A DNA stretch of 64,000 nucleotides from Lepidodermella squamata. Lineage: Eukaryota > Animalia > Gastrotricha. Shown piece after piece: positions 26,508 to 50,824 of this stretch. Position 1 is the first letter of the stretch; each line of letters opens with the position of its first letter. Made by a program: the position numbers and the translations under genes. The notes beneath the pieces are model-generated. The model had not been told where the DNA came from. It ran no database searches and was given only the letters and a program-made list of their open reading frames with translations. Where the stretch lies: positions 930,001 through 994,000 of the forward strand of contig JBLDXI010000020.1 of assembly GCA_047495785.1 (NCBI GenBank), read 5' to 3'.

Positions 26508-29177
26508 TCACTTCGGGGGTAATGGAGGAAAGTTATTGTGGGCACTGACGCTTGATTTAGAGGTCAGGCTCTCATGGGCTTGAATCGGTGGCGTCGGTCG
26601 AGGGTGAGGCGAATTCGGTGGGCCATAGATTTCCTCAGGAAACTTTTTCCCGTTGGGGTCATGGAAAACAACTTTGACCCTAAAAAAAGTACACAATTAT
26701 ATTTGAAGATACACAGCATTAAAAGATAACTAACTCTTCTTTAGGAGTAGTTTTGTTTCGATTCGATAAATTTAACAGTTTGGCAATCGCGATTCCGGTC
26801 AAATCAATTAGAAGCATGACGTATTCCATTAGTGTCATGAAGGAAAAGCCGAAAAACAACCCCAAAATACCGCCGAGATAAGCGAGCAAATCGGCCAGTT
26901 CCAGCCATTCGCTTTCAATCACGGTCTGGTAGTTGAAATCTTTGTAGTAAATGTAGACCTCAGCAAACTGGTTGCCTATGATGTAGTCGGCAAGCTCGTA
27001 GTAAGAACTGATGGGCGCGGTGAATGTTTCTTTAGTGCATCCGTCAAGGTCATCGAGAAGGTGGTAAGGAATACCGCTACTAACCATCTTTGCAATGTTT
27101 GAGGTTTTTGTGCAAGTGCTATCATTCTTGGCGATTCTTTTGTCAAATACTTGTTTGATCGTTCGGCATAAGGGGGACTATCATATCGGATGAAACTTTT
27201 TCATTTATTCTATAAATTCTATAAATTTGCTTACGAGAGATTGGGAAGATGGGTTAGGCCAGCGCATCGAGCTGATTGTAGGAGTTATGGCATAATTTCT
27301 GCAGTTTTCGGTGCAATTTGCTGCACAGCCAAGCGTATCGGCCTGATACGCTTTCAAAACGCCCTCCCGGCACTTCCATTGGGTCGTGTTTTGGTACGAG
27401 CATGGAGGAACTGTAGTGGAACCGGTAGCGCTAAATGCATAACCATCTTTCGGAAACAGAAAGTCAAAACACTACAAAATGTTCATGTTAGAAAATATTC
27501 TCAAATTTTCAGTAGAAAATACCGAACAGGTGCTGATAACATTCAGCTGGTAGCAAGTCTTGTAGCACGCTGATGATGAGTAGGTCGTTTCCATGACTTT
27601 AGAATACGCATTTCGTGTATCATTTTCGTTTCGCGCGGTCTCATCTGTGCAATCACTGTAAGTGGCGGTGTATAGTTCATTCGTAACAGTGGAAAGGCGT
27701 TGAATGAAGCTCAGTTGTAGTCCAATGTGAGTAGAAGTGCCAGTTGTGACGAAAATGCCAGTCTCCTCGGGGAAAGGCATGTCAGTCTGGTTGTGAATGA
27801 CAATCCTCCATCCAATCTTTTATCAAGATCAACATATACAGACCAAAAATCGTATGCTACTCTAATACCTGCGTTGTCGTTGGGATGTAATGATCGGTAT
27901 CTGCGTTTAGCAACAAGTAAAGACCGTATTGATCTCCTGGTAACTTGGTGATTCGAATTCCAGTGTCATTGGCACCACCGCGTTTCAAAATAAATAAATC
28001 AGTCTCTAAGCCGTAAACCGGACTCTCCTTCTCGAAATAACCGCCGTTAAATGTGTAACAGTTTCCTGATTTATGTAGCGTTCAAAATTCGAGCAAAACT
28101 ACTTTATCCTAAACATACCGTACTGAGAATTCCAGTGCCAATGTCTAAAGGAGCTAGACGATAGAATATAAAAATTTCATACTCTCAATCGATGCGGTGG
28201 CCAATGGCTTACGCTTCGGGGCTGCAGGAAACGCCACTGAACTGGCAATCTAAAACCATGCTACAAACATAGTGAATGAATGTCCTAATGGTGCACATAT
28301 TTGATTGGGGAACTTACTCGCAAAGTTGGTGTCCTATTGCTTCACGTTCCTGAACAGGCACTTTTGAAGCCTTCTCTTGGATAGCCAGTTTTATCTGAGT
28401 GTCGTCAGAGAAAGCTGGGTATTCTCCAGGAGGAGGAGCGACTGCATTCTGGGGTTTAGGTCCCTGTATCACCTGTCGCTTTTTTCTGGAAAGAATTTCC
28501 CGTTTTTTCCGACCAGACGGAGGTGCCGGCGGTGTAGTTCCAGCTCCGCCAGTGCCAGCAGTGCCAGTAGCAGCACCGCCAGACGAAGCGGCAGGTGATG
28601 GCGCCGCAGTTACAGGATTGGTTCCAACTGAGCCCGCAATACTAGCCGCATTAGCTACTGTTGCACCACTGTTATCTGTAGGCACAGCTGCTCCACCACT
28701 TCCCCCTCCACCTTTAGCAGCTTGAAATCCACTTGGGTTGTACCAATCATATGAAACAGGGTTGTTGTTACAAACTGCAATCAGAATTTACCATCGAAAG
28801 TTGTAGATGAATATTTCTTACTTGTAATTGCTGGAAAATACAGCCGACGTGATGTTTCGATCGTTACGGATGTCGTTGCCTGGAATCGTGTAAATTTCAC
28901 GATAAAGATCTGGAAAAAAATGTTAAGATATCATATTTAAGAGATCTTTCAATCGAATTACGCTCAGCTCCCAGTAGAGAAGGAAAGACATTAAACCAAT
29001 GCACGCTAACCAGAAGAGTTTTTTCAGGATTCCCGGTTGCTTGACCAAAAAAGGGAATCCAGCCATGGTGGTCTCTTTGAAGAAAGTGACCAGGTATCGG
29101 ATGACGTGAACATCTCGGAAACTTTGCGCGCCGCCTTCGTTCTCCTCTTCAACGTATAAATCATATATTCTGACCAT
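26508..29177 (-). CDS. DEG/ENaC channel subunit 3 (about 9 introns)
   Basis: ETTMAGFP, FPAITICNNNP, GRKKREILSRKKRQ, GNCYTFN, TM2 LAYLGGILGLFFGFSFMTLME. Confidence 0.93.
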
Positions 29178-29536: not shown

Positions 29537-32413
29537 TCAATCTTTTTTCGAAGATATTATGACTGCTCGAACCGTAGCGCTCTTCTGCTGAGGGTGGATC
29601 GCTGATACAGGTTTCGTCAGGCCATGAGGTGGGCCGTATATTGCTGTGGTTTCGAGCGGCAGGTCAGCAGCGTCATGATGAGAATGATGTGAAAGAGAGG
29701 CCGATTTGCCTCTGCCATCTAAACTTTGATCACATGTTTCAGGCAAATGACCTTTCGGCGAGGTTTTGTTCTTCTCGCAGTGAACAATCAGCTTCCCAAT
29801 TGCGATTCCGATCAAGTCAAACAGCAGCATTACATACTCCATCAGAGTCATGAAGGAGAAGCCGAAAAACAGGCCGATGACACCACCAAGGTACGACAAC
29901 AGATCAGGTAAGGCTAGCCATTCACTTTCGATTACAGTTTGATAGTTGAAATCCTTGTAGTAGATGTAAAGCTCGGCGAACTGGTTCCCGATGATGTAAT
30001 CCGCTATTTGGTAGTAAGAAGTGATCGGGCAATGAAACGTTTCTTTGCTGCAACCATCTAAATCGTCGAGAAGCTTGTACGTATTTCCCGATTTAACCAT
30101 GTTCCTTATATTAGACGTATTCGTACAGGTTGAGTCTGTGCCATTAATTCTCTTATCCAGGATACTTTTGATTGAAGAGCAAACGGAGGACTAAAATAGA
30201 GCCAAATGATTCTTCGTAAGGTATCGTATAGGAAGAAAAAATTACCAGAGATTGTACGTTTGGATTAGGCCAGCGCATCGAGCTTATCGTTGTGCTCACA
30301 GTATAACTCCTAAGATTGAGATTAATTCAAGCTCCGGGGTGCATTTTCAGACAACTTACTCGCAGGATTCAGGGCATTCGCTACTGCAATTCAGGCCATC
30401 GGCAATGTAAGCTTTCAGAATTCCTTCCCGGCATGTCCATTGAGTTTGGTTGGTGTAAGAACATGCTGGTTCGGAAACATTACCGGTTGAGCTAAAAGCG
30501 TAACCTTGGTTCGGGTACAAGAAGTCGAAACACTAGAAACGGCACTTGAATAGACAATTACAAGATGAAGCTACTTAAACATACCCCGCAGTTTTTGAGA
30601 ACGTATCTATGTGGAAAAAAATCAATTATATTTTTGAAAATTCATGAAAGTCTCAAACCTCTGGTAACATGTTTTATAGCATGCTGATGACGTATAAGTG
30701 ATCTCCATGAGCTTTGAGTACGCATTTTTGGGGTCATCCGGATCTCGAATTTTCTTAGTGACGCAATTACTGTACTGTGCTGTGTAGAGTTCATTCGTTA
30801 CGGTAGAAAGCTGCTCAATGTAGCTGAGTTGCATGGCTATTCGAGTTGAGGTGCCAGTTGTGACAAAAATACCACTCTCCTCAGGAAAGGGCATTTCAGT
30901 TTGGTTGTGAATCACAACTCTCCAACCAATCTTGACACGAAGTTTTGTATACATTTTCTGAGTAATATCGGATTTTTACCTGTGTGGTATCGGGAATATA
31001 ATGGTCCGTATCTGATAATTGATAAGTTCATCGCGAAATCTTTCCAAATTATATGAACTCCTACCGGCATTTAATAAAAGATAAAGCCCGTACTGATCGC
31101 CGGGCAGCTTGGTGATTCTGATTCCTGTATCGTTATCACCACCTCGCTTCAGAACGAACAGTTCTTCCTCGTCCCCATAGACCGGGCTTTCCTTCTCAAA
31201 GTAACCGCCATTGAATGTGTAGCAGTTACCGTATTGATTATTCCAGTGCCAATGACGGAATTCTCTGTTGAAAAATCGATTGTACACATTTATTTTCATG
31301 ATTTGTTCGCTTCTTACGATCCCGGGTTGCATGAGACTCCGCTGAACTGGCACGACAGCACCATGTCACAGAGTTGATGTCCGATATTTTGTCTATCATT
31401 GTATGCTACTTTAGACGCTTTTTCTTGAACAGAAAGTGTCGTCTGCACAGAGGGTGAGTAGTTCGGATATTCTGCCGGTGGGACGTTGATACTCATAGTC
31501 GGCGGTGGGGCTGGAGCCTTTTGTTGAGTTGACGGCCCAGATGCTGCTTGGATAGGGGGCGGTGCTGCCTGTCTTTTCTCCCTGAGATGAGCCTCAATCT
31601 CGTCGCCCACTTCTCGTTTCTTACGACCGGGCACTGGAGCTGCAGGAGGACTTGCAACTTTTGCTGTTGTAGCCGCGGCTGCGGTCGTAGCTGCCGCGAC
31701 AGTCGGAGCTGCTGTTGCGACTGAAGGGGCTGATGTAGCAGCCACGGAGGGCGAAGGAGCTGCTGCTGATCCCGATGAGACGGTTCCGGTGCCTGTCCCG
31801 GTTGCAGTTCCAGTACCCGTTCCGGTTGGTGTACCCGATGAAGAGCTGGTACTACTGGTACATCCAGGTGAGGTGAGTGACTTCTCCAAAGCCGATTTGT
31901 ATCCACTCGCGTCATACCATTCGTAGTTGACTGGGTTATTGTTACAAACTAAAAGACGACATAGTCGTAATCTATGAGCAATTATTTCAAGGATTTGCCT
32001 TACTTGTGATAGCGGGGAAGTACAGGCGGCGAGAAGTTTGAATCGAAACAGCCGTTGATGTTTGCCATTGTAGAAAGTTGGTAAAAAAGAGCTGGTAAAG
32101 ATAATGACGTGTAAGTCAAATATTCAATTTTTCAGATTTCTTACATTCAACTGCCAGCCAAGGAGCCACGCCATTATGCCTATACTGGCTAGCCAGAAAA
32201 GTTTCTTCAGGATTCCTGGCTGCTTGACGAGAAATGGGAAGCCTAAATTGATCGAAGATCGAAGAATGATTCGAAAACTGTCAAGTCCTAGAGCAAACCT
32301 GCCATGGTGGTTTCCCGGAAGAATGTTTTAATATAGAGCCAAACATTCGCGTTTTTGAAATTCTGGGCTTCGCCGCCTTCTTCCTCGACATAAAGATCGT
32401 AGATTCGCCACAT
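29537..32413 (-). CDS. DEG/ENaC channel subunit 4 (about 10 introns)
   Basis: MWRIYDLYVEEE start, GNCYTFNGG, MPFPEESG, TM2 LSYLGGVIGLFFGFSFMTLME. Confidence 0.93.
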
Positions 32414-34189: not shown

Positions 34190-37100
34190 TTACGAATAAC
34201 CTTGAAATGTTTGATTAGTAGAATATGGATCATACGCACCGCCGGTTGCTGCTGGGTAATGCGCTTGATACTGTTCGGCTGTCAGGCCCAGGTAAGCTGC
34301 ATAAGCGTCCACAACAGCTGTTGAACCTCGGCGTGACCCGTAATAGTCATAGCTCGGAGGGGTTGGATTACTCCCAGCAGGGTCGTTCCCGTAAACGGGG
34401 GCCAAACCTGCAGTTGTAGGTGGACGTTGCCCTGGAATTCCGTACAAGTTGTTTGAGTCCACCGGATAGCCTTTGGCAACATGCGAAAATCCAGAGCCAG
34501 GCTTATTCGTGGTAACGGCTACCGGGATTGCTTCAGATGTCGGCCTGGGGCATATCAAAAGCAATTCAGGCAGGTTTGATAAATGTTTTAAAGCTCACGC
34601 TTGTTTGTCAGGGTTGGTAGCGTTAGGCTTGCAACATAGAAGGGTCAATTTTCCGATGCCAATCGCAATAAGGTCGATGAACAGCATAACATATTCCATC
34701 ATAGTCATAAACGTAAATCCGAAGAACAATCCTAAGAGAATTCAGATCAAGCAATAGCCCAAAAAAATGATAAAGCTGGAATACCGAAAATACCGCCAAG
34801 GTAAGACAATAAATCCGGAAGATTCAGCCATTCACTTGCAACAACGGTCTTTAAAGAAGAAAAGACTCCACCTTAATATTCATAACAAGATTTATGAAAT
34901 TAAACCTGATAGTTGAAGTCCCTATAGTAGATATAGACTTCTGCGAATTGATTTCCAATGATGTAGTCAGCCAGCTCGTAGTAAGAAGAGATCGGGTCAT
35001 GGAATTCTTCATTCGAGCACCCGTCCAAGTCATCAAGGATTTTGTAGCCTCCGCCTTGCTTCACCAAGAATTCGGAGTAAGCTTTCACATTCGAAGTATT
35101 CGTACAAGTCGCGTCTGAGCCATTGATCCTTTTGTTTATGATCGCCTTGATACTTTTGCACAGAGGAGACTAATGCATGCAACAGGAAAAAATAAAATCA
35201 AGATGAGAGAAAGCGAGTCTCACCAATGATTGGCTACTCGGGTTGGGCCACCGCATAACGCTTGTAGTCGCTGATATGGAATAGCCCCTACGAATGATTC
35301 GATCATGCTTTCATAGCCTTATTTGCCGAAGATTATAAGTATACCTGCAACTGTCAGGGCAGTCATCTGCGCAGCCCAGTGTATCCGCCATGTACATCTG
35401 CAATATTGTTTCTCGACAAGTCCACTGCGTCTCGTTTGAGTAAGAACAAGGCGAGGCTGTTACGTTGCCGCTATCGCTGAATGCTTTCCCCTGACTCGGG
35501 AATAGGAAATCGAAGCACTAGAAAATAGAAGATCGTAGTTTTAGAGTACTTTATACTAAATGGGATTACGTTGCAATTCTTAAGGACCTGCTTTTGATAG
35601 CAGGTTTTGTAACAACCTGAAGATGAGTATGTTGTCTCTAGTAAACGTGAATAGGCGTTGCGAGGGTCGTCAGCAACCCGGGCTGTCTCATCGATGCAAT
35701 CGCTGTAAGTAGCCGTGTAAAGTTCGTTCGTGACGCTCGCCAGTTGCTCAATGTAACTCAGCTGTAGCCCAATGTGTGTTGAAGTTCCTGTTGTCACGAA
35801 AATGCCACTTTCCTCTGGGAAAGGCATGTCAGTTTGATTGTGAATCACGATGCGCCAGCCAATCTTGAGAGAAAGCGAAATGAAGTTCAACTCAATTTTA
35901 CCCAAATTTGCATACTTGGGTCGTTTGCGGTAGGTAATATTCAGTGTTAGCGTTCAGTAGTAGGTAAAGCCCGTAAGTATCCCCAGGAAGCTTCGAGATC
36001 CTAATTGCACTGTCGCTAGTATTTCCCACCTTCAATTCGAACAGTTTTGTTGTTGAACCAGACGCCGGGCTTTCCTTCTCCAAATATCCACCATTGAACG
36101 TAAAGCAGTTTCCTATAACAATAGCGCAATCCTTCAGTAGGCAAAAAATCAATGATGCGAGCTTTTTTACCGAATTGGTTGTTCCAATGCCATTGTTTGA
36201 ACGAACTGCAACGAATTTCAAGTGAATCAAAGTCAAGCCCATCTATTTTATACTTACGTGCCAGGATCGCAAGACTCTCCACCGTACTGGCATTCTAAAA
36301 CCATGCTGAAATAAGATATATTAATCAGAGAACACTTTTCATCCAAGAACGAACTCGCATAGCTGATGACCTTTAACAAATGGACATTAGGAAATGTTAT
36401 TAGGGAAGGATCATTAGTGATACCGATTGAAGCGCGTTGTTCATAGGGAATTTTCGACGCTTTCTCCATCACTGTTAGCTGTTTTTGCATGTTCGGTGAG
36501 TAGTTTGGATATTTAGCGGGTTGAATGTTTGCTGCCGCAGCTCGCTGCTGGGGGCTGGGACCACCCTGCGGTGGTGGTTGAGGGGCGCCAGGAGGCGCAG
36601 GTCCGGAAGCAGGCCCAGGAGCAACTCCAGGTGCTGGTGCAGGTGGCGGCGCTTGTTGCTGCCTTTTGATGCGTCTCAGCTTGGCTTTTCTGCTAGCGGA
36701 GGAATCACTTTCCGGTGCATCAGCAGATCTTTTCCTTCTACCGGTCGGTGATGCCGGCGGACTTGCAGGTGGGCTCGAAGGTGGGCTCGCAGCAGGACTT
36801 GACGGAGGACTGGACGGAGGGCTCGACGGAGGGCTCGACAGCGGGCTGGACGGAGGGCTCGACGGCGGGCTGGACGGTGGGCTCGCAGGCGGACTAGATG
36901 GAGGGCTTGACGGTGGGCTCGCAGGAGGACTTGACGGAGGACTAGAAGGAGGGCTTGAAGGTGGGCTTGACGGAGGACTAGAAGGGCTGGAGGCCGGACT
37001 AGATGCAGGGCCAGATGCAGGACTAGATGCTGGGCCTGAAGCAGGGCCTGATGCAGGACTAGATGCAGGACTAGATGCAGGGCCTGATGCAGGACTAGAT

Positions 37101-38191: not shown

Positions 38192-40710
38192 TTAAAATTT
38201 GAACTGTTGAGGAGCCAGCGGTGATTTGCTGTTTTCCTTAACGTGTGGATGGACAATGTTCTCAGAAGCTTTACGGCGTGGCGCTTTCTCGTCTTTGCTA
38301 ACAGAAACATGGATGGTACCTTCGTCAGTATCCCTACTTTAGTTTGCAAGTAACATTCATTGTGAAATCAAAGAATGACTCATACCTTAAATTATCGTCA
38401 GATGACGAGGTTGCTACTGATGAACCACGCTTGTTTTGTTCAGATTCTGAATGCCGCATTTTGACCGACATACAGCATTTGGCAATTGCAATTACAATCA
38501 GATCGATCACGAACAGCACGTACTCGCAGAGAGTTAACATGGTGAATCCGAAAAACAAGCCTGTGGGAAGCAAAATTAGATAGAAAGGGCAACAGATTTA
38601 GACGTTCCATGCGCCTACCAACAATGCCACCGAGATAAGCGATAAGATCGCCGATTTCAATCAATTCAGTCTCTATGATGGCTTGATGCTTAAAATCTAT
38701 ATCGATAGATTAATTAGTTCCATACAAAAAGAGAGAACTATTCCTACCGTTGTAGTACACAAAGACTTCGGCGAATTGATTGCTAATCATGTAAGCGATA
38801 TCGTCCTGGTTGTTCGACGCGATGGAGACTGAGCACTGTTTCAAGTCGTTAAACATCTGAAAACCAGGGGAGTGTCATATATTGCTAAGCACGAATGAAG
38901 GCTAGATACCTTGCTTGTGGATCCTTTCTTGTACTCTTGGGCGATTATCGATGCGGAGCAGTTAGTGCCATTTTGCGAGGCAATTGCTTTCAGTTTATCA
39001 TAGAGCTCACCGCAAACTTTGATCTGTTAGAGGACAAGTAAGTGGGAAACATTTCTGACGTGGATTCTTACCAGTGTTAGGCCTTCATCCGCAGGCCATT
39101 TAAGCATCGATACAGTTGTGTCGTATGAAAAGCTCCTACAACATAGAACAGGAAAAGTATAGCGAGATGCAACAAAGAAACTTCTCAGCCATACGTGCAC
39201 GTATCAGGACAACTGCAGGGCAGCTTGTTATCGATATAATCTTGCCAGATGCCCATTTTACACGTCCCTGTAGAAAATGGGACAATTAAATCATCTGTTT
39301 TAGGTGATTGTGCCACGTACACAGCGTTTCATTTTTGAAACTGCATAAAGGTAGGCTCCGATAGCCTGGGACGGATTTGAAGGCGCTGCCATTGTTCGGG
39401 AAGGAGTAATCGTAACATCCACAGCTTTTCATTACCGTCAGGCTGTAACACGTTTTGAGACACGCTTCTGGTGTATAGGCAACCTCTAGAAAGTTCGAAA
39501 ACGCGTTTATCGGATCGTCACTTTGCAGGCCATCGGAATCAACGCATTCGCTATAATTGGCCGTGTACAAACCATTGCTAACCAGCCCGAGCTTTTTCAT
39601 ATAACTCATTTTGATGCCAACGTTGGTCGAAGTCCCAGGCATTATGAAGATACCCTGTTCGTCAGGAAACGGCATCGCTGTTTGATTGTGAACGACTAGA
39701 CGCCAGCCAACTTGCGATGTGGTGTACAGCGAGTGATCCAAGTCGGCATGAAGAAGTAACCTCAATCCATACGAATTTCCAGTTTGTGTCGCCTTACGAA
39801 CGCCTGGTTTCGCAGCATTACTTCCGCCGGTTTTCATTTCCCAAGCTGATACATTCTCGTCCCTTAGTGGGCTATCTGCCTTCTTGTAGCCAGCGTTGAA
39901 CGTCCAGCAGCTTCCGTATTTCGGCGACCAAAACCATGTCGAAAATTCTCTGAAAAAACTATCTTTTGAGGACCGCCTTTGGCTAATAATTCTGACTTAC
40001 GAAGCCACGTCACAATCCTGTCCATTGTAGGTGCACTGCAAGACTATGTCGCAGAGTGAATGACCGGCGATTGATCTATTGCGATAAGGAACGACGGCGG
40101 CCAACTCCATGATTGAATACATGTTTGAGAACGACGAGTCGAAATTAGGCATTGTAATGATCTTGTTGTTGTTGTTATTATTGTTATTGTTATTGCTGTT
40201 CCCACCGCCCTTGTTTTTTGGGGTTGTAGTGACAGACTTGGCAGCCTGTCGTCTCTTTCGCCTGAACTGATCATCTGGAGGTGGCGGCATCGCTGAATTA
40301 TTTGCACTTGAGAACCAACCTCTTGTAACAGCATTGTTATTGCATAGTCTAAAAAGTTGACAGAATCTAAGAATATAGACATAAGGGCCTAGATCAAACT
40401 CTTACGTTATCGCTGGGAAGTCCAGCTGTCGAACAGATTCGATAGTCACAGCGGTCGTGGCCTGCCATCGAAGAAGTTTCGAGAAGAAGAGGTCCAGTTC
40501 CCAGATCAAACCCGCCAAAGAAAGTCCGATGCAAACAATCCAGAACAGCTTCCTCAGGATTCCCGCATGTTTTATGAGAGTTGGAAATCCCTGAAGCGTT
40601 GTCTCTCGAAAGAAGCTGCGAGCGTATTCCTTGAAATTCACATCTGTTATCCTGACAGGAATGTCATCTCTTTCAAGGTATTGCAAGCGGAACCAGTCTA
40701 GCTTGCGCAT
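38192..40710 (-). CDS. DEG/ENaC channel subunit 6 (about 9 introns)
   Basis: ETTLQGFP, FPAITLCNNN, RRKRRQ, poly-Asn, GSCWTFN, TM2 IAYLGGIVGLFFGFTMLTLCE. Confidence 0.92.
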
Positions 40711-41366: not shown

Positions 41367-43847
41367 TCAGCGATACATCTGGCTCTGCACCATAGACGGA
41401 TAAGGCTTGAACTCAAGGTTAGTCACGGGTCGCCCAAACGCAGTCGATCGATGATGAACCATTCCACTATCCGGTAAGGGCGGCTGGTTGTTGTAAGGTG
41501 GCTGCATTTGTTCTTGCCACATTGCTGCTCGCGACCTCGTCATAGGACCTTGCATTTCAAGAATCGGCTGCTTTGCCAAGCTGTTAGCACTAGACTTCCG
41601 TTTCTTGGAACATCGCCCAATTCCAATCAGAATGAAATCAATCAACAGTTGTACGTACTCGAAAAGAGTCATAAATGTGAACCCGAAAAATAGACCGACA
41701 GTGCCTCCGAAATAAGCAATCAAGTCGTGCAGGGCCATGTTTTCGTTTTCAACAATTGTTTGATAGTTGAACTCCTTGAAGAATACATATACCTCAGCGT
41801 ACTGCCCGCCGACACCAATCGCAGCCCATTGAGGTTCGGTGGTAAGCTCCCATTTAGTTGAATCCTGGTAAGGAGCTCCGGCTCGGCAAACTCCCATTTT
41901 CTTTGCAGCCGAGGGTATTCCGTCAGTTTCCTCAGCTGCTGACACCGTTAAATAGGTGTAGCCATCGCATTTCGAATCAGAACCGTTACCCCGAGCAGCC
42001 AGTATTTCGTAGATTTCGTCGCAAACCATCATAAGAGAATCTCCAGATGACACTGGCCATTTAAGACGAGAAACAGCTGTTTTGTAAGAATAGTCAGTAC
42101 ACGTATCAGGACAAGAGCACGGCAGCGTTCCTGCTTTAAAATCAGCAATGACGCCCTCTTTACATACCCACGATGACCCAGTCGTCACATTGTAATAACA
42201 AGGATCAAGATCAGCGTAGTCTTCGAATGCTTTGCCCATGTTTGGGTAGTAAAAGTCATAGCAACCACACGTATCCATCACGTATTTTTGATAACATGTC
42301 TTGATGCAAGCAGATTTGGTATACGAAACTTCCATGATACTAGTATAAGCATTTTTGGGGTCGTCCGGGATATATGTCGATGCGTCTATGCAGTCGCTGT
42401 ATGGAGCATCGTACAGGACAGTCGAGACTACGCCAAGTCGCTTGATGTAGCTCATCGAAACGCCAATGCGGGTAGAGGTTCCAGGCATTATTTCGATTCC
42501 GTTCTCCTCGGGGAAGGGCATCTCCGTCTGGTTGTGTACAATCAATCGCCAGCCAACAGTCTTGGTCGTATTCATGTAATGATCAATATCTGCAGCATAT
42601 ACTTAGATTCCCTCTCTCAATGATTGAGGATGAAACTTACCAGAGTTTAAGAGAAGATAAAGGCCGTACTGATCGCCAGGAATACCGGAGTAGCGAACAC
42701 CTGATCTATCCGCTCCGACCTTTATATCCCAGGTTTTGTCACTTTTCGAAGTTGTATCAGCTTTGGCGTAGCCTGAATTAAACGTGTAGCAGTTGCCATA
42801 ATGTGGGTTCCAGTGCCATGTGCTTAGGTTCCTGAGAATTCAGTAAGTCTACAACATAATTTCAATGGTGATGCTGAACACATACGTTGGTATGATGAGA
42901 TCGGAACCTTGCCACCTAGCTGTTAATACCATATCGCACAATTGGTGGCCGGCAAGTGAACGGTTTTGATACGGGACGGTGCATGCCTTTGCTTGAATTG
43001 CCATCATACTCTCCAAAGAAGAAGATAGGCTTTTTGCGACTGAGCTTTTTACAGAGTCCGCGAAAGCCGCACCACCACCACCACCGGCGGGTCCTTGCTG
43101 TGGGCCTGGTTGCTGCTGCTGGCTCGGCATCATTCCTGGCCCCACCGACGGCCCAGCTTGACGCTGAAAGGAGAAGTTTTGAGACCATTCAACTCAGATC
43201 ATTTGGCTGAAACACATACCTTACGCCTCCCTGGGTTGGGTGCAGGTGGCTGTCCTCCCATGCCTCCGGTAGAACCTATACCAGTCGCACCTCCCCCACC
43301 ACCTGAAGCACCCGAGACTCCATTTACTACCGCCTGGGCAGCGGGCTGCCCCGACTGAACACCGTTTCCCGCCGACTGAACTGCGGGCCCCACTGGACCA
43401 GCAGCACCTCCAGCCGGTCCTGGAGGTGGTGGTTGAAACATAGATGCGCTTGAACCTCCATCTTCATACCAGTCAGTAGTAACCTGTGATACAATCAATA
43501 TTGGAAATCAAGCACTAATTATCATTATCTACCGGATTATTATTGCAGATCGTCACTGCTGGGAAAGGAAGCTGTCGAGCAGTTTCAATCGAAATGGCTG
43601 TATTTGCTTGCCAGCTTAGAAATTTCGTTAGAAAAGCTTGCATCTGCCATTCCAGACCAAGGGTGCATAAAATTATAGCTGATATCCAGAAGCATTTTTT
43701 GAAAATTCCTGGTTGCTTTACTAGCGGAGCAACACCCTGAAGAGACGTTTCATAGAAGAACGTTTTCAACCAATGCTTCACGTGGACATCGTTATAGTGC
43801 TGCGGCTCGAATTCTTCGTCTGGCACGTAATATCTCCAAAATAACAT
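41367..43847 (-). CDS. DEG/ENaC channel subunit 7 (about 4 introns)
   Basis: ETSLQGVA, FPAVTICNNNP, GRRK|RQ across an intron, a 1.2-kb final exon, TM2 IAYFGGTVGLFFGFTFMTLFE. Confidence 0.93.
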
Positions 43848-44175
43848 GACTTTTTCTCAAAATTATCTGATGGTAAACTAAGTTTCGAACTACTATTAAA
43901 TTCGTTATTTTTCCAGGATTTACATTGATCGTCATTATTGATTGCTCCAAATGGATGTAAATTTTTTATGTCTAAGTGCTCGCTATTGGCACACAGGGAA
44001 TGTTGGGGGCGCGATTGAAACACACTGTTGTTTAGCAACACAAATGTTTTCAAAAATGTTTTTATTTGAAAAAAACTGCAAGATAAACGAGGTTAAAGAC
44101 ATTGATTTTCACCCAAACGAAACGGATTAAACAGTGAAGTCGGTTTCTGTGTGGTTTAGAGTGCGATGAACTGCG

Positions 44176-47157
44176 TTAATACCGATGGGAATACGGGTAG
44201 AGATTCGACGGCCCTGCTGCGTGAAATGTGTTGGCGGCCTGTTCAGCCAGAGTTTGCGTGATTGACCTTGAAAATTTTACATAAATTCCAGAAATTTCAA
44301 ATAAAATGATTCAGCATTACCTTCGACGAGGCTGATATTGAGCTTTCATGTTGTTGTAAGTGGAGTCTTCGGATTCCAGAGGTTTTTTCTCCGACGTGAA
44401 GCGGCCAACGAAAACTACAATTAAATCGATCAGGAGTTGAATGTATTCGAATAGAGTCATGAACGAAAAGCCGAAGAACAGGCCAAGGATGCCTCCGAAA
44501 TACGCAATAACATCAGTCAGCGCAACGTTTTGACTTTCGATGATAGTCTGATAGTTGAAGTCTTTATAGAAAATGTAAACCTCGCCGAACTGGCTGCCGA
44601 TTGCGAACTGGGAATAATCGGACGCTTTGTAGTAGAGCGGTGGATAGGGCGCAATTAAAACACAAGCCTCGCATTTTCTAACCAACGGTGCCATACCACT
44701 CGAAGCTTTCAACCGTTGCGTTACTAAATAGGATGTACTGTTACACGTCGTATCATTGCTCTTGGATCTTTTATCCAAAATATCGTAGAGCTCGGAACAG
44801 ATGAGTTGCAATGTTTTCTTATTCGACATCGGCCACTTCAGGTTGGCTATAGTTGTATCGAAAGAGTATGCTTTGCAGGTATCCGGGCAATCGCATTTAA
44901 CATCGGTGTCGCGAAAGATTTTCGCGTAAGTAGCCTTGCAGTTCCATAGTGTATTGTTAGTTTTATCGTAGGCACAAGGTGGAACGTCTTTATAGTCCTT
45001 AAAGGCTGTCCCGATGTTCGGATAATAGATGTCGTAGCACGAGCAGTATTTCATTATGTACTGCTGATAGCAGGTCTTCAAACACGCTGGTTTCGAGTAG
45101 GAAACTTCCAGCAAATTTGTGTAAGCGTTCTTTTCGTCGTCAATGTTCAGCTCGGTCGCATCGACGCAGTCGCTGTAAGGCGCGTTGTAAAGAACATTAT
45201 CGACGACGCCCAAACGTTCGATGTAGCTCATGGAGATGCCGATTCTGGACGAGGTGCCAGGAGCTATGAAGACGCCACTCTCTTCGGGAAACGGCATTTC
45301 AGTTTGATTGTGAATTACAACTCTCCAGCCTATTTGAGTCGTCGTATTGGTATAGTGATCCTTATCTAAAATAAATCGTATTAATTTGACATAGTTAAAG
45401 GGAAGCTCAATATACCTGAGTTAAGGAGTAGATAGAGGCCATACATATCGCCCGATTGTGCTGAAGTTTTGATGCCGTCGCCATTCGGGCCACCTTTTTT
45501 GATAGTCCATGTATCCTTGTAGTTCGAAGCAGGGCTTTCAGCTTTGGTGTATCCGGCGTTGAATGTGTAACAGTTTCCTAATAAAGAGAGTTTGAACGGT
45601 GCTTATTCTCACTTATTTCGGGAATTTACCATAGAATGGATTCCAATGCCAGGTCTTGAATGCTCTGATAGAAACAAAGCAATATTTTCATAAATGAGAA
45701 GGCGTTGAACTCACGTTCCAGGATCGATAGTTGCGCCCTGCCAAGTTGCCGAAAGAATCATATCACACAGCTAAGAAATCATACGAAATTTGAAACTGGG
45801 AGAATCACAAGTGAGTTTTCTAACCTGGTGTCCAGCCAGCGATCTATTTTGGTATGGGAGACTGCAGGCCGCTGTCTGAATGAGGACGCGGCTTTCGAAA
45901 GAAGCTGCCAAGTTCTGTTTGACGGCGGACGCATCGGTTCTAGTTCCTGGTGGGCCGGGCTGTGCTCCAGGTGGTGGTGGTCCTGGCAAAGCGCCAACAG
46001 GGCCGGTTGGAACTTGTCGCTAAGATACTATTTTGATGATCCGTGCTAAGATTTTACAGATCGCCTTACCTTCTTTCGACCTGACGGCGGCGGTGGAGGC
46101 ATCCCAGCCGGTCCCGCCGCGGCTGCTTTGGTAGTTGCACCTGGGCCGACCGGGTTAGTCGCTCCCCCACCAGCTGCAGGAGTGCCCGCTGGTGGTGCAG
46201 GAGTCGCTCCTCCTGATGCAGGTTGCGTTCCGCCAGTACCAGCAGGGGGGCCGGATGCCCCTTGCATTTGGCCACCGGGAGTTGTAGCACCTGCAGAAGG
46301 AGGGTTGCCTCCACTTGGGCCTGGAGCCATTGCTCCTGTGACAGCTCCGGATGCGGCTTGACTTTGACCACTCGCGGGACCACTGGTTGCCCCTGGACCA
46401 CTAGGTACCCCAGGGCCACTGGGTACACCAGGACCACTAGGAACACCAGGACCACTGGGCACACCAGGACTACTAGGTACCCCAGGACTACTAACACCAG
46501 GACCGCTAGGTACACCAGGACCACTAGGTACACCAGGACTACTCGGTACGCCAGGACCACTAGGTACCCCAGGACTACTAACACCAGGACCGCTAGGTAC
46601 ACTAGGACCACTAGGTACACCAGGACTACTCGGTACGCCAGGACCACTAGGTGCACCAGGACCACTGGGTACACCGGGACCACTAGGTGCACCAGGACCA
46701 CTTGCTGCGCCAGGACCAGATTGCTGGTTTGATGTCGAGAAAATGTCATAGTCAGCTGCGCCCCCATACCAATCTGTCGTAACCTGGGAAAAGGCCAAAT
46801 AATGAGTGATTGAAAACTTTAAACTCTTTGAAGACCGACTGGATTATTATTGCAGATTGTTATAGCCGGGAAAGGCAACTGCCGGGCAGTTTCCAACGAA
46901 ATTGCCGTGTTTGCTTGCCAAGTAAGGAAAGAGCCGAGGAACGCAGCCACCTCCCAGTAAAGGCCAAGAGCACACACGATTATTCCTGCAACCCAAAACA
47001 GTTTTTTGAAAAGACCAGGTTGTTTTGCAAGCATCGGCACTCCGGCCAAGGTTGACTCTCGAAAGAATGTATCGAGCCATCCGCCCACGTTTACCTCACG
47101 ATACTCCTGGAACTCAGGCTCCTCAGCCTTAACGAAATAACCCCACAGCATCGGCAT
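44176..47157 (-). CDS. DEG/ENaC channel subunit 8 (about 7 introns) with SGPGVP repeat
   Basis: ESTLAGVP, FPAITICNNNP, GRKK|RQ across an intron, TM2 IAYFGGILGLFFGFSFMTLFE. Confidence 0.93.
46375..46720 (-). repeat. Coding 18-nt minisatellite (SGPGVP/SSPGVP) with an 87-nt higher-order duplication
   Basis: Tandem ccaggaccactaggtaca-type units. 46473-46559 is repeated at 46560-46646 with about one mismatch. Confidence 0.9.
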
Positions 47158-47376
47158 GTTCACCACTATAAGATGAAAGAACTGCTTTCATCAAATTTCC
47201 GAAACCCAATGAAAAAATCACAGTTTTAATTATTAATATCTTTGAGTGCTTCTGATCACAACGCGACAATTATCGATCTGTTAATGGCGTATGGCCTATC
47301 AATATTTTACATGTCCAACTTCAATTCAAAAATTTACAGTTCACGCAAGTAATCGATGAGAAATAAGTTAAGGATG

Positions 47377-49870
47377 TCAAAACTTTGTTGGTATGCCGCC
47401 AGAATATGCAGGTGGTAGTGGCTGCTTACTAGGGCTGTTAGGGGCGAGCTGAAAGCCGTAGTTGAAGTTCGGAGGCGGAGCATTCAGCAGAGCACTGCCT
47501 CTGTTTGGTGGTACCAGCATTCCACCACGTTGGCTCATAGATCCGGGGCGAATCATGCTTCAAAAGGAAAGAAAATGTAGTGAAATGATTAAAAAGGATA
47601 GACTGATTACTTTTGAAGGTGCATTGAACGTCGCCTTGTCACGGGGCCCTTGTACCCATCGTTAACCTCAGCTGAAGTTATGTTGGATCGACAAGCCAGA
47701 CGGCCGATGACGATAACGATGAGATCAATCAGTAGTTGGACGTACTCGAACAATGTCATAAAGCTGAATCCGAAGAACAGGCCGACAATGCCACCGAAAT
47801 ATGCGACAAGATCAGTGAACGACATGTTCTCATTATCAATAACTGTCTGATAGTTGAAGTCCTTGAAAAAGATGTAGACCTCGGCAAAGTTGTTGCCAAC
47901 GCCGTAAGCAGCCATCTCTTCTTCATTGCCGTATTTCGCCTTCATTTCCGGTGCATATGGGGTGCCACTTACGCACTCATAGTAGGCTGCAGCTGACTTG
48001 GCTACTCCATCCTTGGTTTTTGCTTGGTCAACCAACGTGCTCGTCGTCATGCATGTTGGATCGCTCTGGTTGGTCCGTGCTTTCATTGTTTCGTAGATGC
48101 CATTGCAGACAAGTTGCAAGTTCGCTGTCGTCGCAACTGGCCATTGCAGCGTCGAGATAGAAGTCTCGTATTTGTGCGCCTTGCAAGTGTTCGGGCATTT
48201 GCAGGACAAAGCTCCCGTTTGGTACGAAACAGCAACCGTGTTTTTGCAGTTCCAATCAGTCATGTTAGCAGAGTTGTACATGCAGGGCGCTAGCTTGCCG
48301 CCGTAGTCGCCAAACGCCTTGCCGGTGCTAGGATAGTAAAAGTCGTAGCAGCTACAAACCCGCATTACTTCCTGAAGCATAATTTTGATTAAAACTCGAA
48401 AATTTCCGATAAGACAACCTTTTGGTAGCAAGTTTTCAAACAAGCCGATTCGGTGTAAGCGACCTCCATCATATTGGTATAAGCATTTCGCTCGTCGTCG
48501 GGTATGAAGTTTGGCTCGTCAACACAGTCCGAATATTGGGCTGAGAAGATGTAGTTGTCGAGAACACCCAGCTTTTCGATGTAGCTCATTGAAATGCCGA
48601 CACGGGTCGACGTGCCTGGAGACACGAAGAAGCCACTCTCTTCCGGGAACGGCATTTCAGTCTGGTTATGCACGACAATGCGCCATCCGACTTGCTTGGT
48701 CGTATTCATGTAATTGTCAATATCTGGTACGAAAAAGCTTCATCCTGTTCAAAATTTTATAGCTGAAAGCTGATACCTGCGTGCAAGAGTAGGTAAAGCC
48801 CGTATTGGTCCCCAGTCTGCCACGAAATTCGGACCCCGTTGCCATCATCGCCTGTTTTGATCTTCCAAGTATCCGTACTCTCTGTTTTCTGATCTGACAG
48901 CTTGTAACCGCCGTTGAACGTGTAACAGTTACCTTTTATTAAGGAAGATTAATTTGCTGAATGATACAGTATTATCAACAAACCGTAGTATGAGTTCCAA
49001 TGCCACATAGTAAAATTAGTGTCTGGATTCAGGCTTTCCCCTTGCCAAGTCATCGACATTACCATATCACATAGCTATCGATAAAAGTCGTTGAAATCGA
49101 ATTCATCTTCAATATCTAGCTAACCTGGTGCCCGGCAGATGTTCGATTTTCATAGGGCAGAGTGCAGGCCTTTGCTTGCAGCGTCATCGCCTGCTCCAAA
49201 GAAGCCGCTACATTGGCAATCGGCTTGCTTGCTGAGTTTGCTGTATTGGAGACCACATTCGTAGTAGGCGGAGTTGACACCGCCCCTAAAATGTTAGTTG
49301 GTCCCGGCGGAACTTGTCGCTTTAACAGGGGATAAAATCGTATAGCGAACATTTTTTTAAGATAGATCTAATAACTTTTTTTCGGCCTGGTGGTGCCGGT
49401 CCAGGTGCTGCAGGCGCTGGACCTGGGGCACCAACTATCCCCATTACCGGCGTAGTCCCAGCAGCTGGATCTGATATGGCATTAAGTTCGTCTAATGAAG
49501 TGACCTTAACGCAAATTCCTAATTATTGAAACTTCAAAACTCAGCATTTCCTTACTGGATTGTTATTACACAAAGTAATAGCAGGAAACGGCAGAAGTCG
49601 AGCGGTTTTCATTGAGACAGCTGTGTTAGCCTCCCACGACAGAAAGGTTCCGAGGAAAGTTAGAATTTCCCACATCAGTCCAAGGGTGCAAAACATAATT
49701 GCGATAATCCAGAAGAGCTTCTTCAAAACGCCTGGTTGCTTTATCAGCATAGGAACGCCCTGCAGCGTCGTCTCGAGGAAAAACGTCTTCAGCCATGTCC
49801 CGATTTTCAGGGTTTGCAACGGCTGCGGCTCAAAGTCTTCCTCGTCCACGTAAAATCGCCAGATATGCAT
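47377..49870 (-). CDS. DEG/ENaC channel subunit 9 (about 7 introns)
   Basis: MHIWRFYVDEE start, ETTLQGVP, FPAITLCNNNP, GRKK|RQ across an intron, TM2 VAYFGGIVGLFFGFSFMTLFE, tail LPPAY. Confidence 0.93.
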
Positions 49871-50824
49871 TTTTTGAATGTTATTAACACGGATTTCGTG
49901 AAAAACCAAAAAAAATTTAAGAGCCAAGCATGTTTGATTTTTCTGTTCAATAATTCATTCGCGTCACGAGATTTGAAAAAGCTTTCAGGTTCGATTGGTG
50001 CATGTTTTGCAAACACAACTCGCCGACACCAGGAAACAATCACTCAAAGCTGTAAATTCATGCAATTGAATAGGGTAGTAGCAAATTTTTTACGAGGGGA
50101 CTTAAAAACAGGTCAAAGTAATAAAAAGTGAGCATTCGGCGTTATTAGCGCTGCTCGAAAAAGTGGGTCAATGACCCTTGCGGAGGCTGAAAAATGTCAC
50201 GAAGCCTTACAAGCACAGGAAAGGTCAGTGTCGAAAGACTTGCCTTATCTTGGGCAACTCGGTAATTCATCAACAGACGAAGACAGTTAAACTGGAATTA
50301 AGCTAAAAAAACGTTGAAAAAAATTGTTTCCAAAACAGGTCAACAATTAGTCTATTCACGTGTTTGCCCGGGTTTGATCAAAATTTCAAGAAAATTTTCC
50401 AAATTTTCCCATAATGCTACCATATTTAAAAGATGCATTGCATTTTAAAATCCGACGTTTATCTTGATGGTACCCAACTTCTCCCTTTTTTAGCCGAAGT
50501 TGCTTCAAATCATCCCAAATGGCGGCACATAGTGGGAAAAACAATGAAATCCATTCTTCACGGACTTCACCACCTTGTTATTCAATTAACAGAAGAGATG
50601 CAAATACACCGACTGATCGAATTCTTACGTGCCCAATTTGTCAAGTGTCAGGAATAATCAAATTTCCGATTCTTGGGAATGCACACGTCATATGATTTGC
50701 TTTAGACGGAAGGTGTTGACCAGTAAAATTCAACCTTTTAATCACTCCTGTGAAATCTAATAGAGCGAAAATTTATCTTATTCTTCATTTTCATCAGTTT
50801 TGATCGTGCCTGCGTTCGCTAAAC

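What the first reader, a model, noticed from the sequence alone, without database searches (positions are those of the whole stretch)
43164..49375. An intron sits where paralogs have an excisable inter-furin peptide (splicing versus proteolysis)
Seen: genes 1-5 have two basic sites flanking a short peptide: GRRRR-SVEFAGDRLQDSGYHRVKR-Q (19 aa), GRRRR-EAEQIFNRFKR-Q (11), GRKKR-EILSRKKR-Q (8), GRKKR-EVGDEIEAHLREKR-Q (14), GRRKR-SADAPESDSSASRKAKLRRIKR-Q (22). Genes 7, 8 and 9 instead have a phase-0 GT-AG intron (43164-43219, 56 nt; 46020-46069, 50 nt; 49320-49375, 56 nt) splitting one site, GR(R/K)K|RQ, so the furin motif exists only after splicing. The gene 8 intron starts gta agg cga tct gta (VRRSV; gene 1 has RRSV). 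The gene 9 intron ends ctg tta aag|cga caa (gene 1 coding has gtt aag cga caa). Known: double furin cleavage releases an inhibitory tract from alpha-ENaC. Inference: the spacer peptide was intronised in one clade (or the intron was exonised in the other), moving its removal from the protein level to the RNA level.
Basis: partly seen in the sequence, partly recalled or inferred. Interest (0 to 1): 0.88.

Follow-up and report, generated by a model that had tools for sequence, protein, structure and literature searches.

The report
Short intron splitting a protease-cleavage site
In three of nine neighbouring ion-channel genes a small intron interrupts a predicted protease-cutting site exactly where five sister genes carry a short peptide between two such sites. 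This is real, but I found no evidence that intron and peptide are the same ancestral DNA, and two separate events look somewhat more likely.

Summary
Nine tandem DEG/ENaC (Pfam ASC) genes lie at about 17.9-49.9 kb. Genes 1-5 read GR(R/K)(R/K)R-spacer(8-22 aa)-Q with two R-x-K/R-R motifs. Gene 6 has one site. Genes 7-9 have 56/50/56-nt GT-AG phase-0 intervals between GR(R/K)K and RQ.

These intervals behave like the array's other 86 introns in length, AT-richness and splice-site scores, and all have in-frame stops. The junctions themselves were not seen in RNA. Three other gene 9 introns were confirmed in a diverged strain's spliced contigs.

- Relatives from metagenomes, gene 6 and an Intoshia homolog show that one uninterrupted site is ancestral.
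- The two-site state is old, because a two-site gene exists in another species.
- The tree cannot say whether the two-site clade is sister to the intron clade (AU p=0.52).
- Intron and spacer are no more alike than any other intron is to the spacer.
- A second new intron on the same branch is a clean insertion with no peptide counterpart.

My odds are about 0.5 for independent events and 0.3 for shared origin (intronisation or exonisation).

The parts
43164..43219 (-). gene 7 intron E (56 nt, phase 0, GTATGT..TTTCAG) between GRRK and RQ
   Evidence: in-frame stop after 6 codons; GC 0.39 against flanks 0.62/0.68; donor score at the 80th and acceptor at the 63rd percentile
46020..46069 (-). gene 8 intron E (50 nt, phase 0, GTAAGG..TCTTAG) between GRKK and RQ
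   Evidence: stop after 7 codons; GC 0.36 against flanks 0.70/0.63; a second in-frame donor GTAAAA at 46057 would leave a 38-nt intron
49320..49375 (-). gene 9 intron E (56 nt, phase 0, GTTATT..TTAAAG) between GRKK and RQ; the weakest splice sites of the three
   Evidence: stop after 17 codons; GC 0.29; donor at the 21st and acceptor at the 17th percentile; the codons CGA CAA GTT CC that follow are shared with gene 8
43220..43483 (-). gene 7 exon 2 (264 nt, phase 0-0): TTDWY, low-complexity tail, GRRK
46070..46783 (-). gene 8 exon 2 (714 nt, phase 0-0): low-complexity PGVPSG-type repeats ending in GRKK
49376..49504 (-). gene 9 exon 2 (129 nt, phase 0-0) ending in GRKK
   Evidence: its upstream junction is confirmed by the X1 loose end at 49504
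43484..43532 (-). gene 7 intron D (NNNP|VTTDWY, phase 0), specific to genes 7-9
46784..46839 (-). gene 8 intron D
49505..49555 (-). gene 9 intron D, seen spliced in run X1
   Evidence: the loose end at 49504 continues with the letters of 49556-49579
18701..18775 (+). gene 1 paired polybasic sites and 19-aa spacer (GRRRR...RVKR-Q)
22070..22120 (+). gene 2 paired sites and 11-aa spacer
28473..28514 (-). gene 3 paired sites and 8-aa spacer
31569..31628 (-). gene 4 paired sites and 14-aa spacer
36659..36742 (-). gene 5 paired sites and 22-aa spacer
40246..40263 (-). gene 6 single uninterrupted site RRKRR-Q
41382..43856 (-). gene 7 (DEG/ENaC, 5 exons in my model)
   Evidence: Pfam ASC 8.6e-43
44328..47187 (-). 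gene 8 (DEG/ENaC)
47643..49876 (-). gene 9 (DEG/ENaC), transcribed and spliced in run X1

Best explanation
The three intervals are ordinary short U2-type introns, inherited from the common ancestor of genes 7-9. They happen to interrupt the family's conserved polybasic (furin-type, R-x-K/R-R|Q) site.

Splicing joins GR(R/K)K to RQ. The mRNA then encodes the same single site that gene 6 and all foreign relatives encode without interruption. A proprotein convertase would presumably cut it in the secretory pathway. That would leave a two-chain channel subunit:
- an N-terminal piece with TM1, beta1 and the low-complexity tail;
- a C-terminal piece starting with Gln and carrying the rest of the ectodomain and TM2.

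The paired sites with spacer in genes 1-5 are a separate and older elaboration of that same site. It was most simply produced by a local duplication or insertion that repeated the basic motif. It is kept in another species, and it would release an 8-22-aa peptide.

On this reading intron and spacer share a place but not an origin.

Shown: the sequences, the gene models, the intron-like properties, the ancestral state and the age of the two-site state. Inferred: cleavage by a convertase, splicing at exactly these junctions, and the independence of the two events.
For: The intervals resemble the other 86 introns and are needed to keep the reading frame.

A single uninterrupted site is found in every lineage outside the two clades:
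- L004 ERKRRKR|Q;
- L007 KKRRKR|G;
- L003 ARKKR|Q;
- gene 6 RRKRR|Q;
- Intoshia P0004 TRKRR|Q, with no intron at the site;
- L001, the closest relative of genes 7-9.

L011/L012 from another species carries GRRRR-SAEVSEEPHDRVKR-Q and groups with genes 3-5 (99/96). The two-site state therefore predates both that speciation and the split of genes 1-2 from genes 3-5.

Intron D (NNNP|VTTDWY) was gained on the same branch as E. It is a clean insertion, since every other paralog reads straight through with no extra residues. So insertion-type gain was operating there.

E introns score no higher against the spacers than control introns do.

In two of the three possible resolutions of the clade trichotomy, independent events need fewer steps.
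Against: The intron lies within one codon of where the spacer is inserted. With 15-16 intron positions in genes 6-9 over about 2100 nt, I estimate about 1.5-3% for this by chance (my estimate).

The first tree placed the two-site clade as sister to the intron clade (86/85). Holding them together is even slightly better in likelihood in the richer data set (+0.29 lnL, AU 0.52). Under that topology one shared insertion is as parsimonious as two events.

The insert lengths in genes 1 and 5 (57 and 66 nt) match intron size.

L001 has no introns, so it says nothing about E.

The upstream P-x-G-R context is shared by genes 1-5, L011 and genes 7-9, but not by L001, gene 6 or the outgroups.
Confidence: 0.5

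Rival explanations
1. Intronisation. The common ancestor of genes 1-5 and genes 7-9 already had two sites and a spacer of about 57-66 nt. On the branch leading to genes 7-9, and perhaps L001, a GT arose just after GR(R/K)K. The AAG Lys codon of the second site served as the acceptor AG. The spacer then came to be removed from the RNA, leaving one perfect site. L001 would be a processed copy of the spliced mRNA.
For: The position matches to within a codon.

Three of the five spacers end in AAG|CGA CA, which is a ready-made acceptor.

Purine-rich basic codons lie one or two changes from AAG|GTAAG. The spacer of L011 even contains a perfect GTAAGT.

Spacer lengths of 57 and 66 nt fit this genome's intron size.

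L001 is entirely intronless, as a retrocopy would be.

Sisterhood of the two clades is not rejected.
Against: It needs that sisterhood, which is unresolved (the alternative grouping was recovered at 55/44). Otherwise it needs an extra precise loss in the gene 6/L003 clade.

There is no residual similarity to the spacers, although none is expected at this divergence.

Intron D on the same branch cannot be explained this way.
Confidence: 0.22
2. Exonisation. Intron E existed in the ancestor of both clades. In the ancestor of genes 1-5 it lost its splice sites, was retained in frame, and then evolved a basic motif at each end.
For: The same positional match applies. In this array some introns are multiples of three without stops, and my permissive aligner read them through (genes 1, 2 and 5). 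Retention in frame is therefore feasible.
Against: Retention would first destroy the site, giving GRKK-V...x-RQ. It would then require two new R-x-K-R motifs to evolve.

All three present E introns have stops and lengths of the form 3n+2.

The spacer is conserved in outline between gene 1 and L011 (S-[AV]-E...H-x-RVKR-Q). That points to an old, constrained peptide.

It has the same topological requirement as intronisation.
Confidence: 0.08
3. Intron E is ancient in the family and was lost by reverse-transcriptase-mediated intron loss in gene 6, in the foreign relatives and in the ancestor of genes 1-5. The spacer arose afterwards and is unrelated to it.
For: Intron loss is rampant here. About 36 distinct positions are spread over 9 genes with patchy distribution, genes 7-9 have large intron-free 3' exons, and L001 has no introns.
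Against: It requires at least four independent losses. L004 and gene 6 keep other old introns yet lack E. The Intoshia homolog has none at the site; its nearest is a phase-1 intron 6 codons downstream.
Confidence: 0.1
4. One or more of the three intervals is not spliced as proposed. Another junction may be used, the intron may be retained, or the gene may be decaying.
For: The junctions were not displayed in the only read-laying run (15). Gene 9 has weak sites (GTTATT, TTAAAG). Gene 8 has an alternative in-frame donor at 46057.
Against: All other exons of genes 7-9 are intact. Three other gene 9 junctions were confirmed exactly. Coding conservation begins immediately after the proposed acceptor in genes 8 and 9 (RQVP-GP). 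Splice scores lie within the normal range.
Confidence: 0.05

Closest known systems
Vertebrate ENaC alpha and gamma subunits: paired polybasic (furin) sites in the GRIP domain that release an inhibitory tract
   Same: It is the same channel superfamily (Pfam ASC). The sites lie in the same part of the ectodomain, between the first and second finger helices. That placement comes from the AF2 model of P0001 (site 183-187 inside disordered 148-210, between H134-146 and H218-233) and from the sequence match to beta-ENaC. Genes 1-5 and L011 have two R-x-K/R-R motifs flanking a short peptide, as ENaC alpha does.
   Different: There is no GRIP-like beta-sheet. The region is low-complexity and predicted disordered. 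The spacer is 8-22 aa and poorly conserved. Cleavage, inhibition and release are untested. In ENaC the site pairs evolved within vertebrates (PMC8791634), and proteolytic activation is called unique to ENaC (PMC13488063). Any likeness here would therefore be convergent.
Intronisation and de-intronisation of coding sequence
   Same: It is the proposed way of turning a dispensable coding stretch into an intron, or the reverse. It is documented in primate and rodent retrogenes (PMC3002245, PMC3565874) and fission yeasts (PMC3629103), reviewed in PMC3443670, and invoked for snake-venom metalloprotease genes (Kini 2018, as cited in PMC12390062).
   Different: In those cases the homology of intron and exon is shown by alignable sequence between close species. 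Here the paralogs are saturated and only position speaks. The process is rare where it has been measured (PMC2740785, PMC3629103). I found no paper in which the intronised segment is a peptide otherwise excised by a protease. The MsrB1 paper that pairs the two terms concerns a 3'-UTR intron.
Ordinary lineage-specific intron gain by insertion at an AAG| context
   Same: Introns D and E both appear on one branch, both in phase 0, and both as clean additions relative to the uninterrupted ancestral reading.
   Different: No donor element, target-site duplication or similarity between D and E was detectable. The mechanism of gain is therefore unknown.
Proprotein-convertase processing of peptide precursors (G-K/R-K/R amidation signal, Gln after the cut)
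   Same: Gly precedes the basic run in genes 1-5, genes 7-9 and L011. Gln follows the last site in all nine genes and in L001, L003, L004 and L011.
   Different: The substrate is a membrane channel's ectodomain loop, not a secreted precursor. Amidation and pyroglutamate formation are only my reading of the motif.

Membership tests
DEG/ENaC channels (Pfam PF00858 ASC) | Significant match to the ASC profile over both the TM1-proximal and the C-terminal parts | tested here: met
   gene 7 8.6e-43, gene 8 1.4e-37, gene 9 3.5e-27, gene 7 exon 1 4.2e-17, all above the 23.6-bit cut-off.: best solved relatives are ENaC beta, gamma and alpha, FaNaC and ASIC.
DEG/ENaC channels (Pfam PF00858 ASC) | Two transmembrane helices flanking a large Cys-rich ectodomain with the FPAVT-CN and GNCYTFN motifs | tested here: met
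   Gene models. AF2 model of relative P0001 with pTM 0.70, helices 74-103 and 616-657.
U2-type spliceosomal intron | GT..AG ends, length and composition typical for the genome, needed to keep the frame | tested here: met
U2-type spliceosomal intron | Junction observed in RNA | tested here: inconclusive
   gene 9 is spliced at three other introns in run X1, but the E junction was not among the joints listed. A search for junction peptides was blank.
ENaC-type activation by release of an inhibitory tract (GRIP domain) | Two polybasic convertase motifs flanking a tract in the finger region | tested here: met
   Genes 1-5 and L011 only: R-x-K/R-R at both ends in 6 of 6. Genes 6-9 have one site.
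ENaC-type activation by release of an inhibitory tract (GRIP domain) | A structured GRIP beta-sheet covering finger helix alpha2, with a binding pocket for the tract | tested here: not met
   in P0001 the 63 residues around the site have pLDDT below 50 and no strands. The region is Gly/Pro/Ser/Ala low complexity in all paralogs. GRIP is described in PMC13488063.
ENaC-type activation by release of an inhibitory tract (GRIP domain) | Cleavage occurs and raises open probability | not testable with these tools
   Needs expression, western blots and electrophysiology.
Intronisation or exonisation event | Intron and coding segment occupy the same position in homologous genes | tested here: met
   the match is within the one-codon ambiguity of the repeated Arg.
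Intronisation or exonisation event | Residual sequence homology between the intron and the coding segment | tested here: not met
   E introns against the spacers fall anywhere from the 0th to the 98th percentile of 86 control introns. Even E against E is at random level, so the test has little power.
Intronisation or exonisation event | Phylogeny places the two states on adjacent branches with a polarised ancestor | tested here: inconclusive
   the ancestor of the family has one uninterrupted site. The three-clade split is unresolved (AU 0.52 and 0.125).

The most novel reading that the evidence does not exclude
The spacer peptide of genes 1-5 and intron E of genes 7-9 descend from one roughly 55-65-nt DNA segment that entered the polybasic site in their common ancestor. 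One clade removes it from the protein with two convertase cuts. The other removes it from the RNA by splicing. Both reach the same mature two-chain channel. This would be a natural case of swapping proteolytic for spliceosomal excision, made easy because basic codons (AAG/AGG/AGA) lie next to splice-site consensus.
Probability: 0.3. Interest if true: 0.75.

Novelty: new variant of a known kind. Interest (0 to 1): 0.45.

Why it matters
If intron and spacer share an origin, this would be a clear example of a dispensable protein segment moving between post-translational and RNA-level removal. It would also suggest that polybasic cleavage sites are natural seeds for splice sites. I found no paper describing this.

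Even on the ordinary reading, the array documents a lineage-restricted DEG/ENaC subfamily. Its closest annotated relatives are about 25-40% identical over the conserved parts. It has a conserved furin-type site in the finger region, and one clade has paired sites flanking a peptide. That arrangement is so far tied to vertebrate ENaC. It gives an independent system for testing whether proteolysis gates these channels.

Tried and rejected
1. RNA proof of the three junctions. The one read-laying run had to be 6000 nt or less, so gene 7's intron was left out. The E joint of gene 9 was not in the truncated joint table, and gene 8's exon 2-3 region had no X1 coverage.

2. Junction peptides or exon-3 ORFs in the protein collection: blank.

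3. More relatives.
- The word-indexed searches gave only P0001, P0008 and P0006.
- The exhaustive search gave fragments. Looking up the contigs of seven of them (P0008, P0054, P0006, P0003, P0002, P0039, P0004) and of three more (P0126, P0138, P0005) brought L002-L016.
- L008, L013, L014 and L015 start downstream of the site and say nothing about it.

4. Anchored and global similarity of E introns to the spacers, E against E, D against E, and E against all introns: all at random level.

5. An R-S-[AVI] motif at intron codons 3-5 and a shared GATCT looked striking: 0 of 258 control frames for the motif, 8 of 86 control introns for GATCT. I defined both after seeing the data. The three introns are not independent, and gene 7 fits only a loosened pattern. 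I give them no weight.

6. Splicing out of the spacers in genes 1 and 5 by the GT/AG pairs present there would shift the frame. This is my own reading.

7. A tandem-duplication (AGGT) origin of E: the downstream exons start with CG, not GT.

8. My first permissive aligner run read several true introns through as coding. I corrected this by splitting each gene at the site and raising the insertion cost, then fixed gene 7's third intron and the first exons of genes 1 and 9 by hand.

Full report
**What is in the window.** Between about 17.9 and 49.9 kb lie nine intact tandem genes of the DEG/ENaC channel family. Genes 1-2 are on the plus strand and genes 3-9 on the minus strand. There is also a truncated tenth copy at 32933-33818. 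Exons of genes 7-9 match Pfam ASC far above the cut-off. Introns are tiny: 89 in my models, 40-73 nt, median 53, mean GC 0.34 against about 0.49 for exons.

**Check of the observation.**
- Genes 1-5 read G-R-(R/K)-(R/K)-R, then a spacer of 8-22 residues that itself ends in R-x-K-R, then Gln.
- Gene 6 has a single RRKRR-Q.
- In genes 7-9 the upstream reading frame ends GR(R/K)K. It then runs into GT...AG intervals of 56, 50 and 56 nt, and the downstream frame resumes with RQ.
- Read-through hits a stop after 6, 7 and 17 codons, and the lengths are not multiples of three.

These intervals are AT-rich islands (GC 0.29-0.39) inside GC-rich low-complexity coding sequence (0.57-0.70). Their donor and acceptor scores lie at the 17th-80th percentile of the other 86 introns. 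Genes 8 and 9 share the codons CGA CAA GTT CC immediately after the proposed acceptor. I take them as real introns and call them E.

**RNA evidence.** Only two runs hold this DNA. X2 holds 0.89 of the sampled words and is probably the source genome. X1 holds 0.21 and shows spliced joints.
- I had one read-laying run of at most 6000 nt, so I covered genes 8 and 9.
- X1 contigs differ from the window by several percent and show GT-AG joints in gene 9 at 49075-49124 and 48933-48983.
- A loose end at 49504 continues with the letters of 49556 onward.
- All three agree to the base with my gene model, so gene 9 is transcribed and spliced.
- The E joint itself was not among the 15 joints printed (11 were withheld), and gene 8's exon 2-3 region was uncovered.
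- A search for junction peptides was blank.

The junctions therefore remain predicted, not observed.

**Gene models and intron map.** I wrote a spliced protein-to-DNA aligner and guided it with the one close database homolog, P0001. I then corrected the models. About 36 intron positions are spread patchily over the nine genes. Some are old and shared, for example 526 phase 2 in genes 1-8 and 712 phase 0 in genes 1-5 plus two foreign relatives.

Two positions are exclusive to genes 7-9:
- E;
- D, at NNNP|VTTDWY.

Genes 1-6 instead have an intron 6-8 codons upstream of D. D and E are both phase 0 and bracket exon 2, which is exactly the low-complexity tail (264, 714 and 129 nt). All other paralogs read straight through position D with no extra residues. 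D is therefore a clean insertion-type gain.

**Relatives and the ancestral state.** The subfamily is almost absent from databases. The exhaustive search gave 1803 hits, but only a handful exceed 40% identity, and all of those come from metagenome or Logan contigs. I recovered their genes from the DNA:
- L001 (P0001) has no introns and reads SMRKRR-Q.
- L003 reads ARKKR-Q.
- L004 reads ERKRRKR-Q.
- L007 reads KKRRKR-G.

All four have one site and no intron there. The more distant Intoshia linei gene (P0004, GCA_001642005.1) reads TRKRR-Q. It has no intron at the site; a phase-1 intron lies 6 codons downstream. One uninterrupted site is therefore ancestral.

L011/L012, from the same kind of metagenome, encodes GRRRR-SAEVSEEPHDRVKR-Q. 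This is a two-site gene in another species. Its spacer resembles that of gene 1 in outline (S-[AV]-E...H-x-RVKR-Q).

**Phylogeny.** With 13 family members the tree was (L007, L004, ((g6, L003), ((L001, g7-9), g1-5))). The two-site clade was sister to the intron clade at 86/85. After adding L011, L008, L014 and L015, three groups stand:
- A: g1, g2, L015 plus L011, g3-5 (92/95);
- B: L001 plus g7-9 (96/96);
- C: L003 plus g6, L008 (72/73).

Their order collapses. B+C is recovered at 55/44. A+B held together is 0.29 lnL better (AU 0.52). A+C gives AU 0.125.

Two conclusions follow. The two-site state predates the A-internal split and the speciation. And the data cannot say whether A and B are sisters.
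- If they are sisters, one shared insertion followed by a switch costs two events, the same as two independent events.
- If they are not, the shared-origin reading costs three.
- L001 has no introns, so it is silent on E. It would even fit as a retrocopy of a spliced message.

**Sequence tests.** I anchored the intron ends on the spacer ends and compared with the 86 control introns. The E introns scatter from the 0th to the 98th percentile. Global scores are unremarkable. E against E, D against E, and E against every other intron sit at the random mean. At 52-57% protein identity among genes 7-9, neutral sequence is saturated. Two patterns I noticed afterwards are post hoc and not independent, and I set them aside. 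They are R-S-[AVI] at intron codons 3-5, and GATCT in all three introns.

**How surprising is the position?** Genes 6-9 hold 15-16 distinct intron positions in about 2100 nt. Two to four nucleotide positions would count as "in the site". Random placement therefore gives roughly 1.5-3% (my estimate). A preference for AAG| contexts would raise it. That is low but not compelling for a pattern picked out after the fact. There is also a mechanistic reason for a hotspot: basic codons (AAG, AGG, AGA) are one or two changes from AAG|GTAAG and supply AG. The spacer of L011 even contains a perfect GTAAGT. The same fact makes intronisation of a two-site spacer easy, so it cuts both ways.

**Where the site sits.** P0001 aligns to beta-ENaC over TM1/beta1 and again from the GNCYTFN strand. 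Its AlphaFold model (pLDDT 73.5, pTM 0.70) puts the site (183-187) in a 63-residue disordered stretch between finger helices 134-146 and 218-233. That is the region where ENaC carries its GRIP domain, a beta-sheet over helix alpha2 (PMC13488063). No such sheet is predicted here. The resemblance to ENaC's paired sites is therefore one of logic and location, not of domain. ENaC's pairs arose within vertebrates (PMC8791634).

**Verdict.** The evidence available here favours an ordinary clade-specific intron that splits an ancestral single cleavage site, plus a separate and older duplication-type origin of the two-site spacer (about 0.5). Shared origin by intronisation (0.22) or exonisation (0.08) stays open. 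Intronisation and de-intronisation are known but rare processes (PMC3002245, PMC3565874, PMC3629103, PMC2740785). I found no described case in which the segment is otherwise excised by a protease. RNA-seq of this animal and genomes of its sister species would settle both the junctions and the polarity.

Noticed in passing
window 32933-33818 (-): A truncated tenth DEG/ENaC copy lies between genes 4 and 5. An N-terminal exon-like ORF (33636-33818, MVQIYRLYVDDE...) is followed directly by pieces matching only the C-terminal half of gene 5 (residues about 606-711 and 800-883). The middle, including the cleavage site, is missing. It is probably a deletion pseudogene.
   Followed up: partly
window 43220-43483, 46070-46783, 49376-49504 (-): Exon 2 of genes 7-9 is exactly the low-complexity tail. 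It is bounded by the two clade-specific introns D and E, and both ends are phase 0 (264/714/129 nt). Skipping it would keep the frame and delete both the tail and half of the cleavage site. It is a possible cassette exon.
   Followed up: no
window 46057 (-), inside gene 8 intron E: A second in-frame donor (GTAAAA) 12 nt into the intron would leave a 38-nt intron and insert VRRS. The protein would read GRKKVRRS-RQ, with a minimal R-R-S-R motif.
   Followed up: no
all nine genes at the site; L011:3-424: Gly always precedes the basic run in genes 1-5, genes 7-9 and L011. Gln follows the final cut in all nine genes and in L001, L003, L004 and L011. These are the classic signals for C-terminal amidation and N-terminal pyroglutamate in peptide precursors, which is odd in a channel ectodomain. 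In L015 the neighbouring gene (1496-2302, -) is a Cu2_monooxygenase (PHM/DBH-type) gene.
   Followed up: no
window 22085-22117 (+): After trimming of the basic residues, the gene 2 spacer would be EAEQIFNRF, which ends in -RF. It has no Gly for amidation. This is curious because FMRFamide-gated channels belong to this superfamily, and it is probably chance.
   Followed up: no
genes 7-9 and L001, motif after AGHQLCDM: The L001 + gene 7-9 clade has lost both cysteines of the otherwise conserved C-x6-C (LCDMVLSCQFSGVSC becomes LCDMVLTARWQGSDL and similar). One ectodomain disulfide is probably absent in this clade.
   Followed up: no
window 36700-37300 and 46100-46700 (-): The tails before the site are hypervariable tandem low-complexity repeats: SSPA/SSPP units in gene 5 and PGVPSG units in gene 8. 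Their length ranges from 43 to about 350 codons among paralogs.
   Followed up: no
L016 (Intoshia linei, GCA_001642005.1): The nearest annotated relatives of this subfamily are orthonectid (Intoshia) and annelid (Owenia) proteins, at 25-40% identity over the conserved parts. The closer relatives exist only as unannotated metagenome or Logan contigs (samples ERZ23486764/787, ERZ27332993/047, SRR23086389) from an intron-poor animal.
   Followed up: partly
window 50951-51421 (+): An ORF with a nuclear-receptor-type zinc-finger motif (C-x2-C...KKFF...CRLARC) lies just beyond gene 9.
   Followed up: no
window 47392-49504, run X1: X1 contigs differ from the window at many third-codon-like positions and carry a 3-nt insertion at 48016. 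The RNA-like run therefore comes from a diverged strain or sibling species, not the sequenced individual.
   Followed up: no
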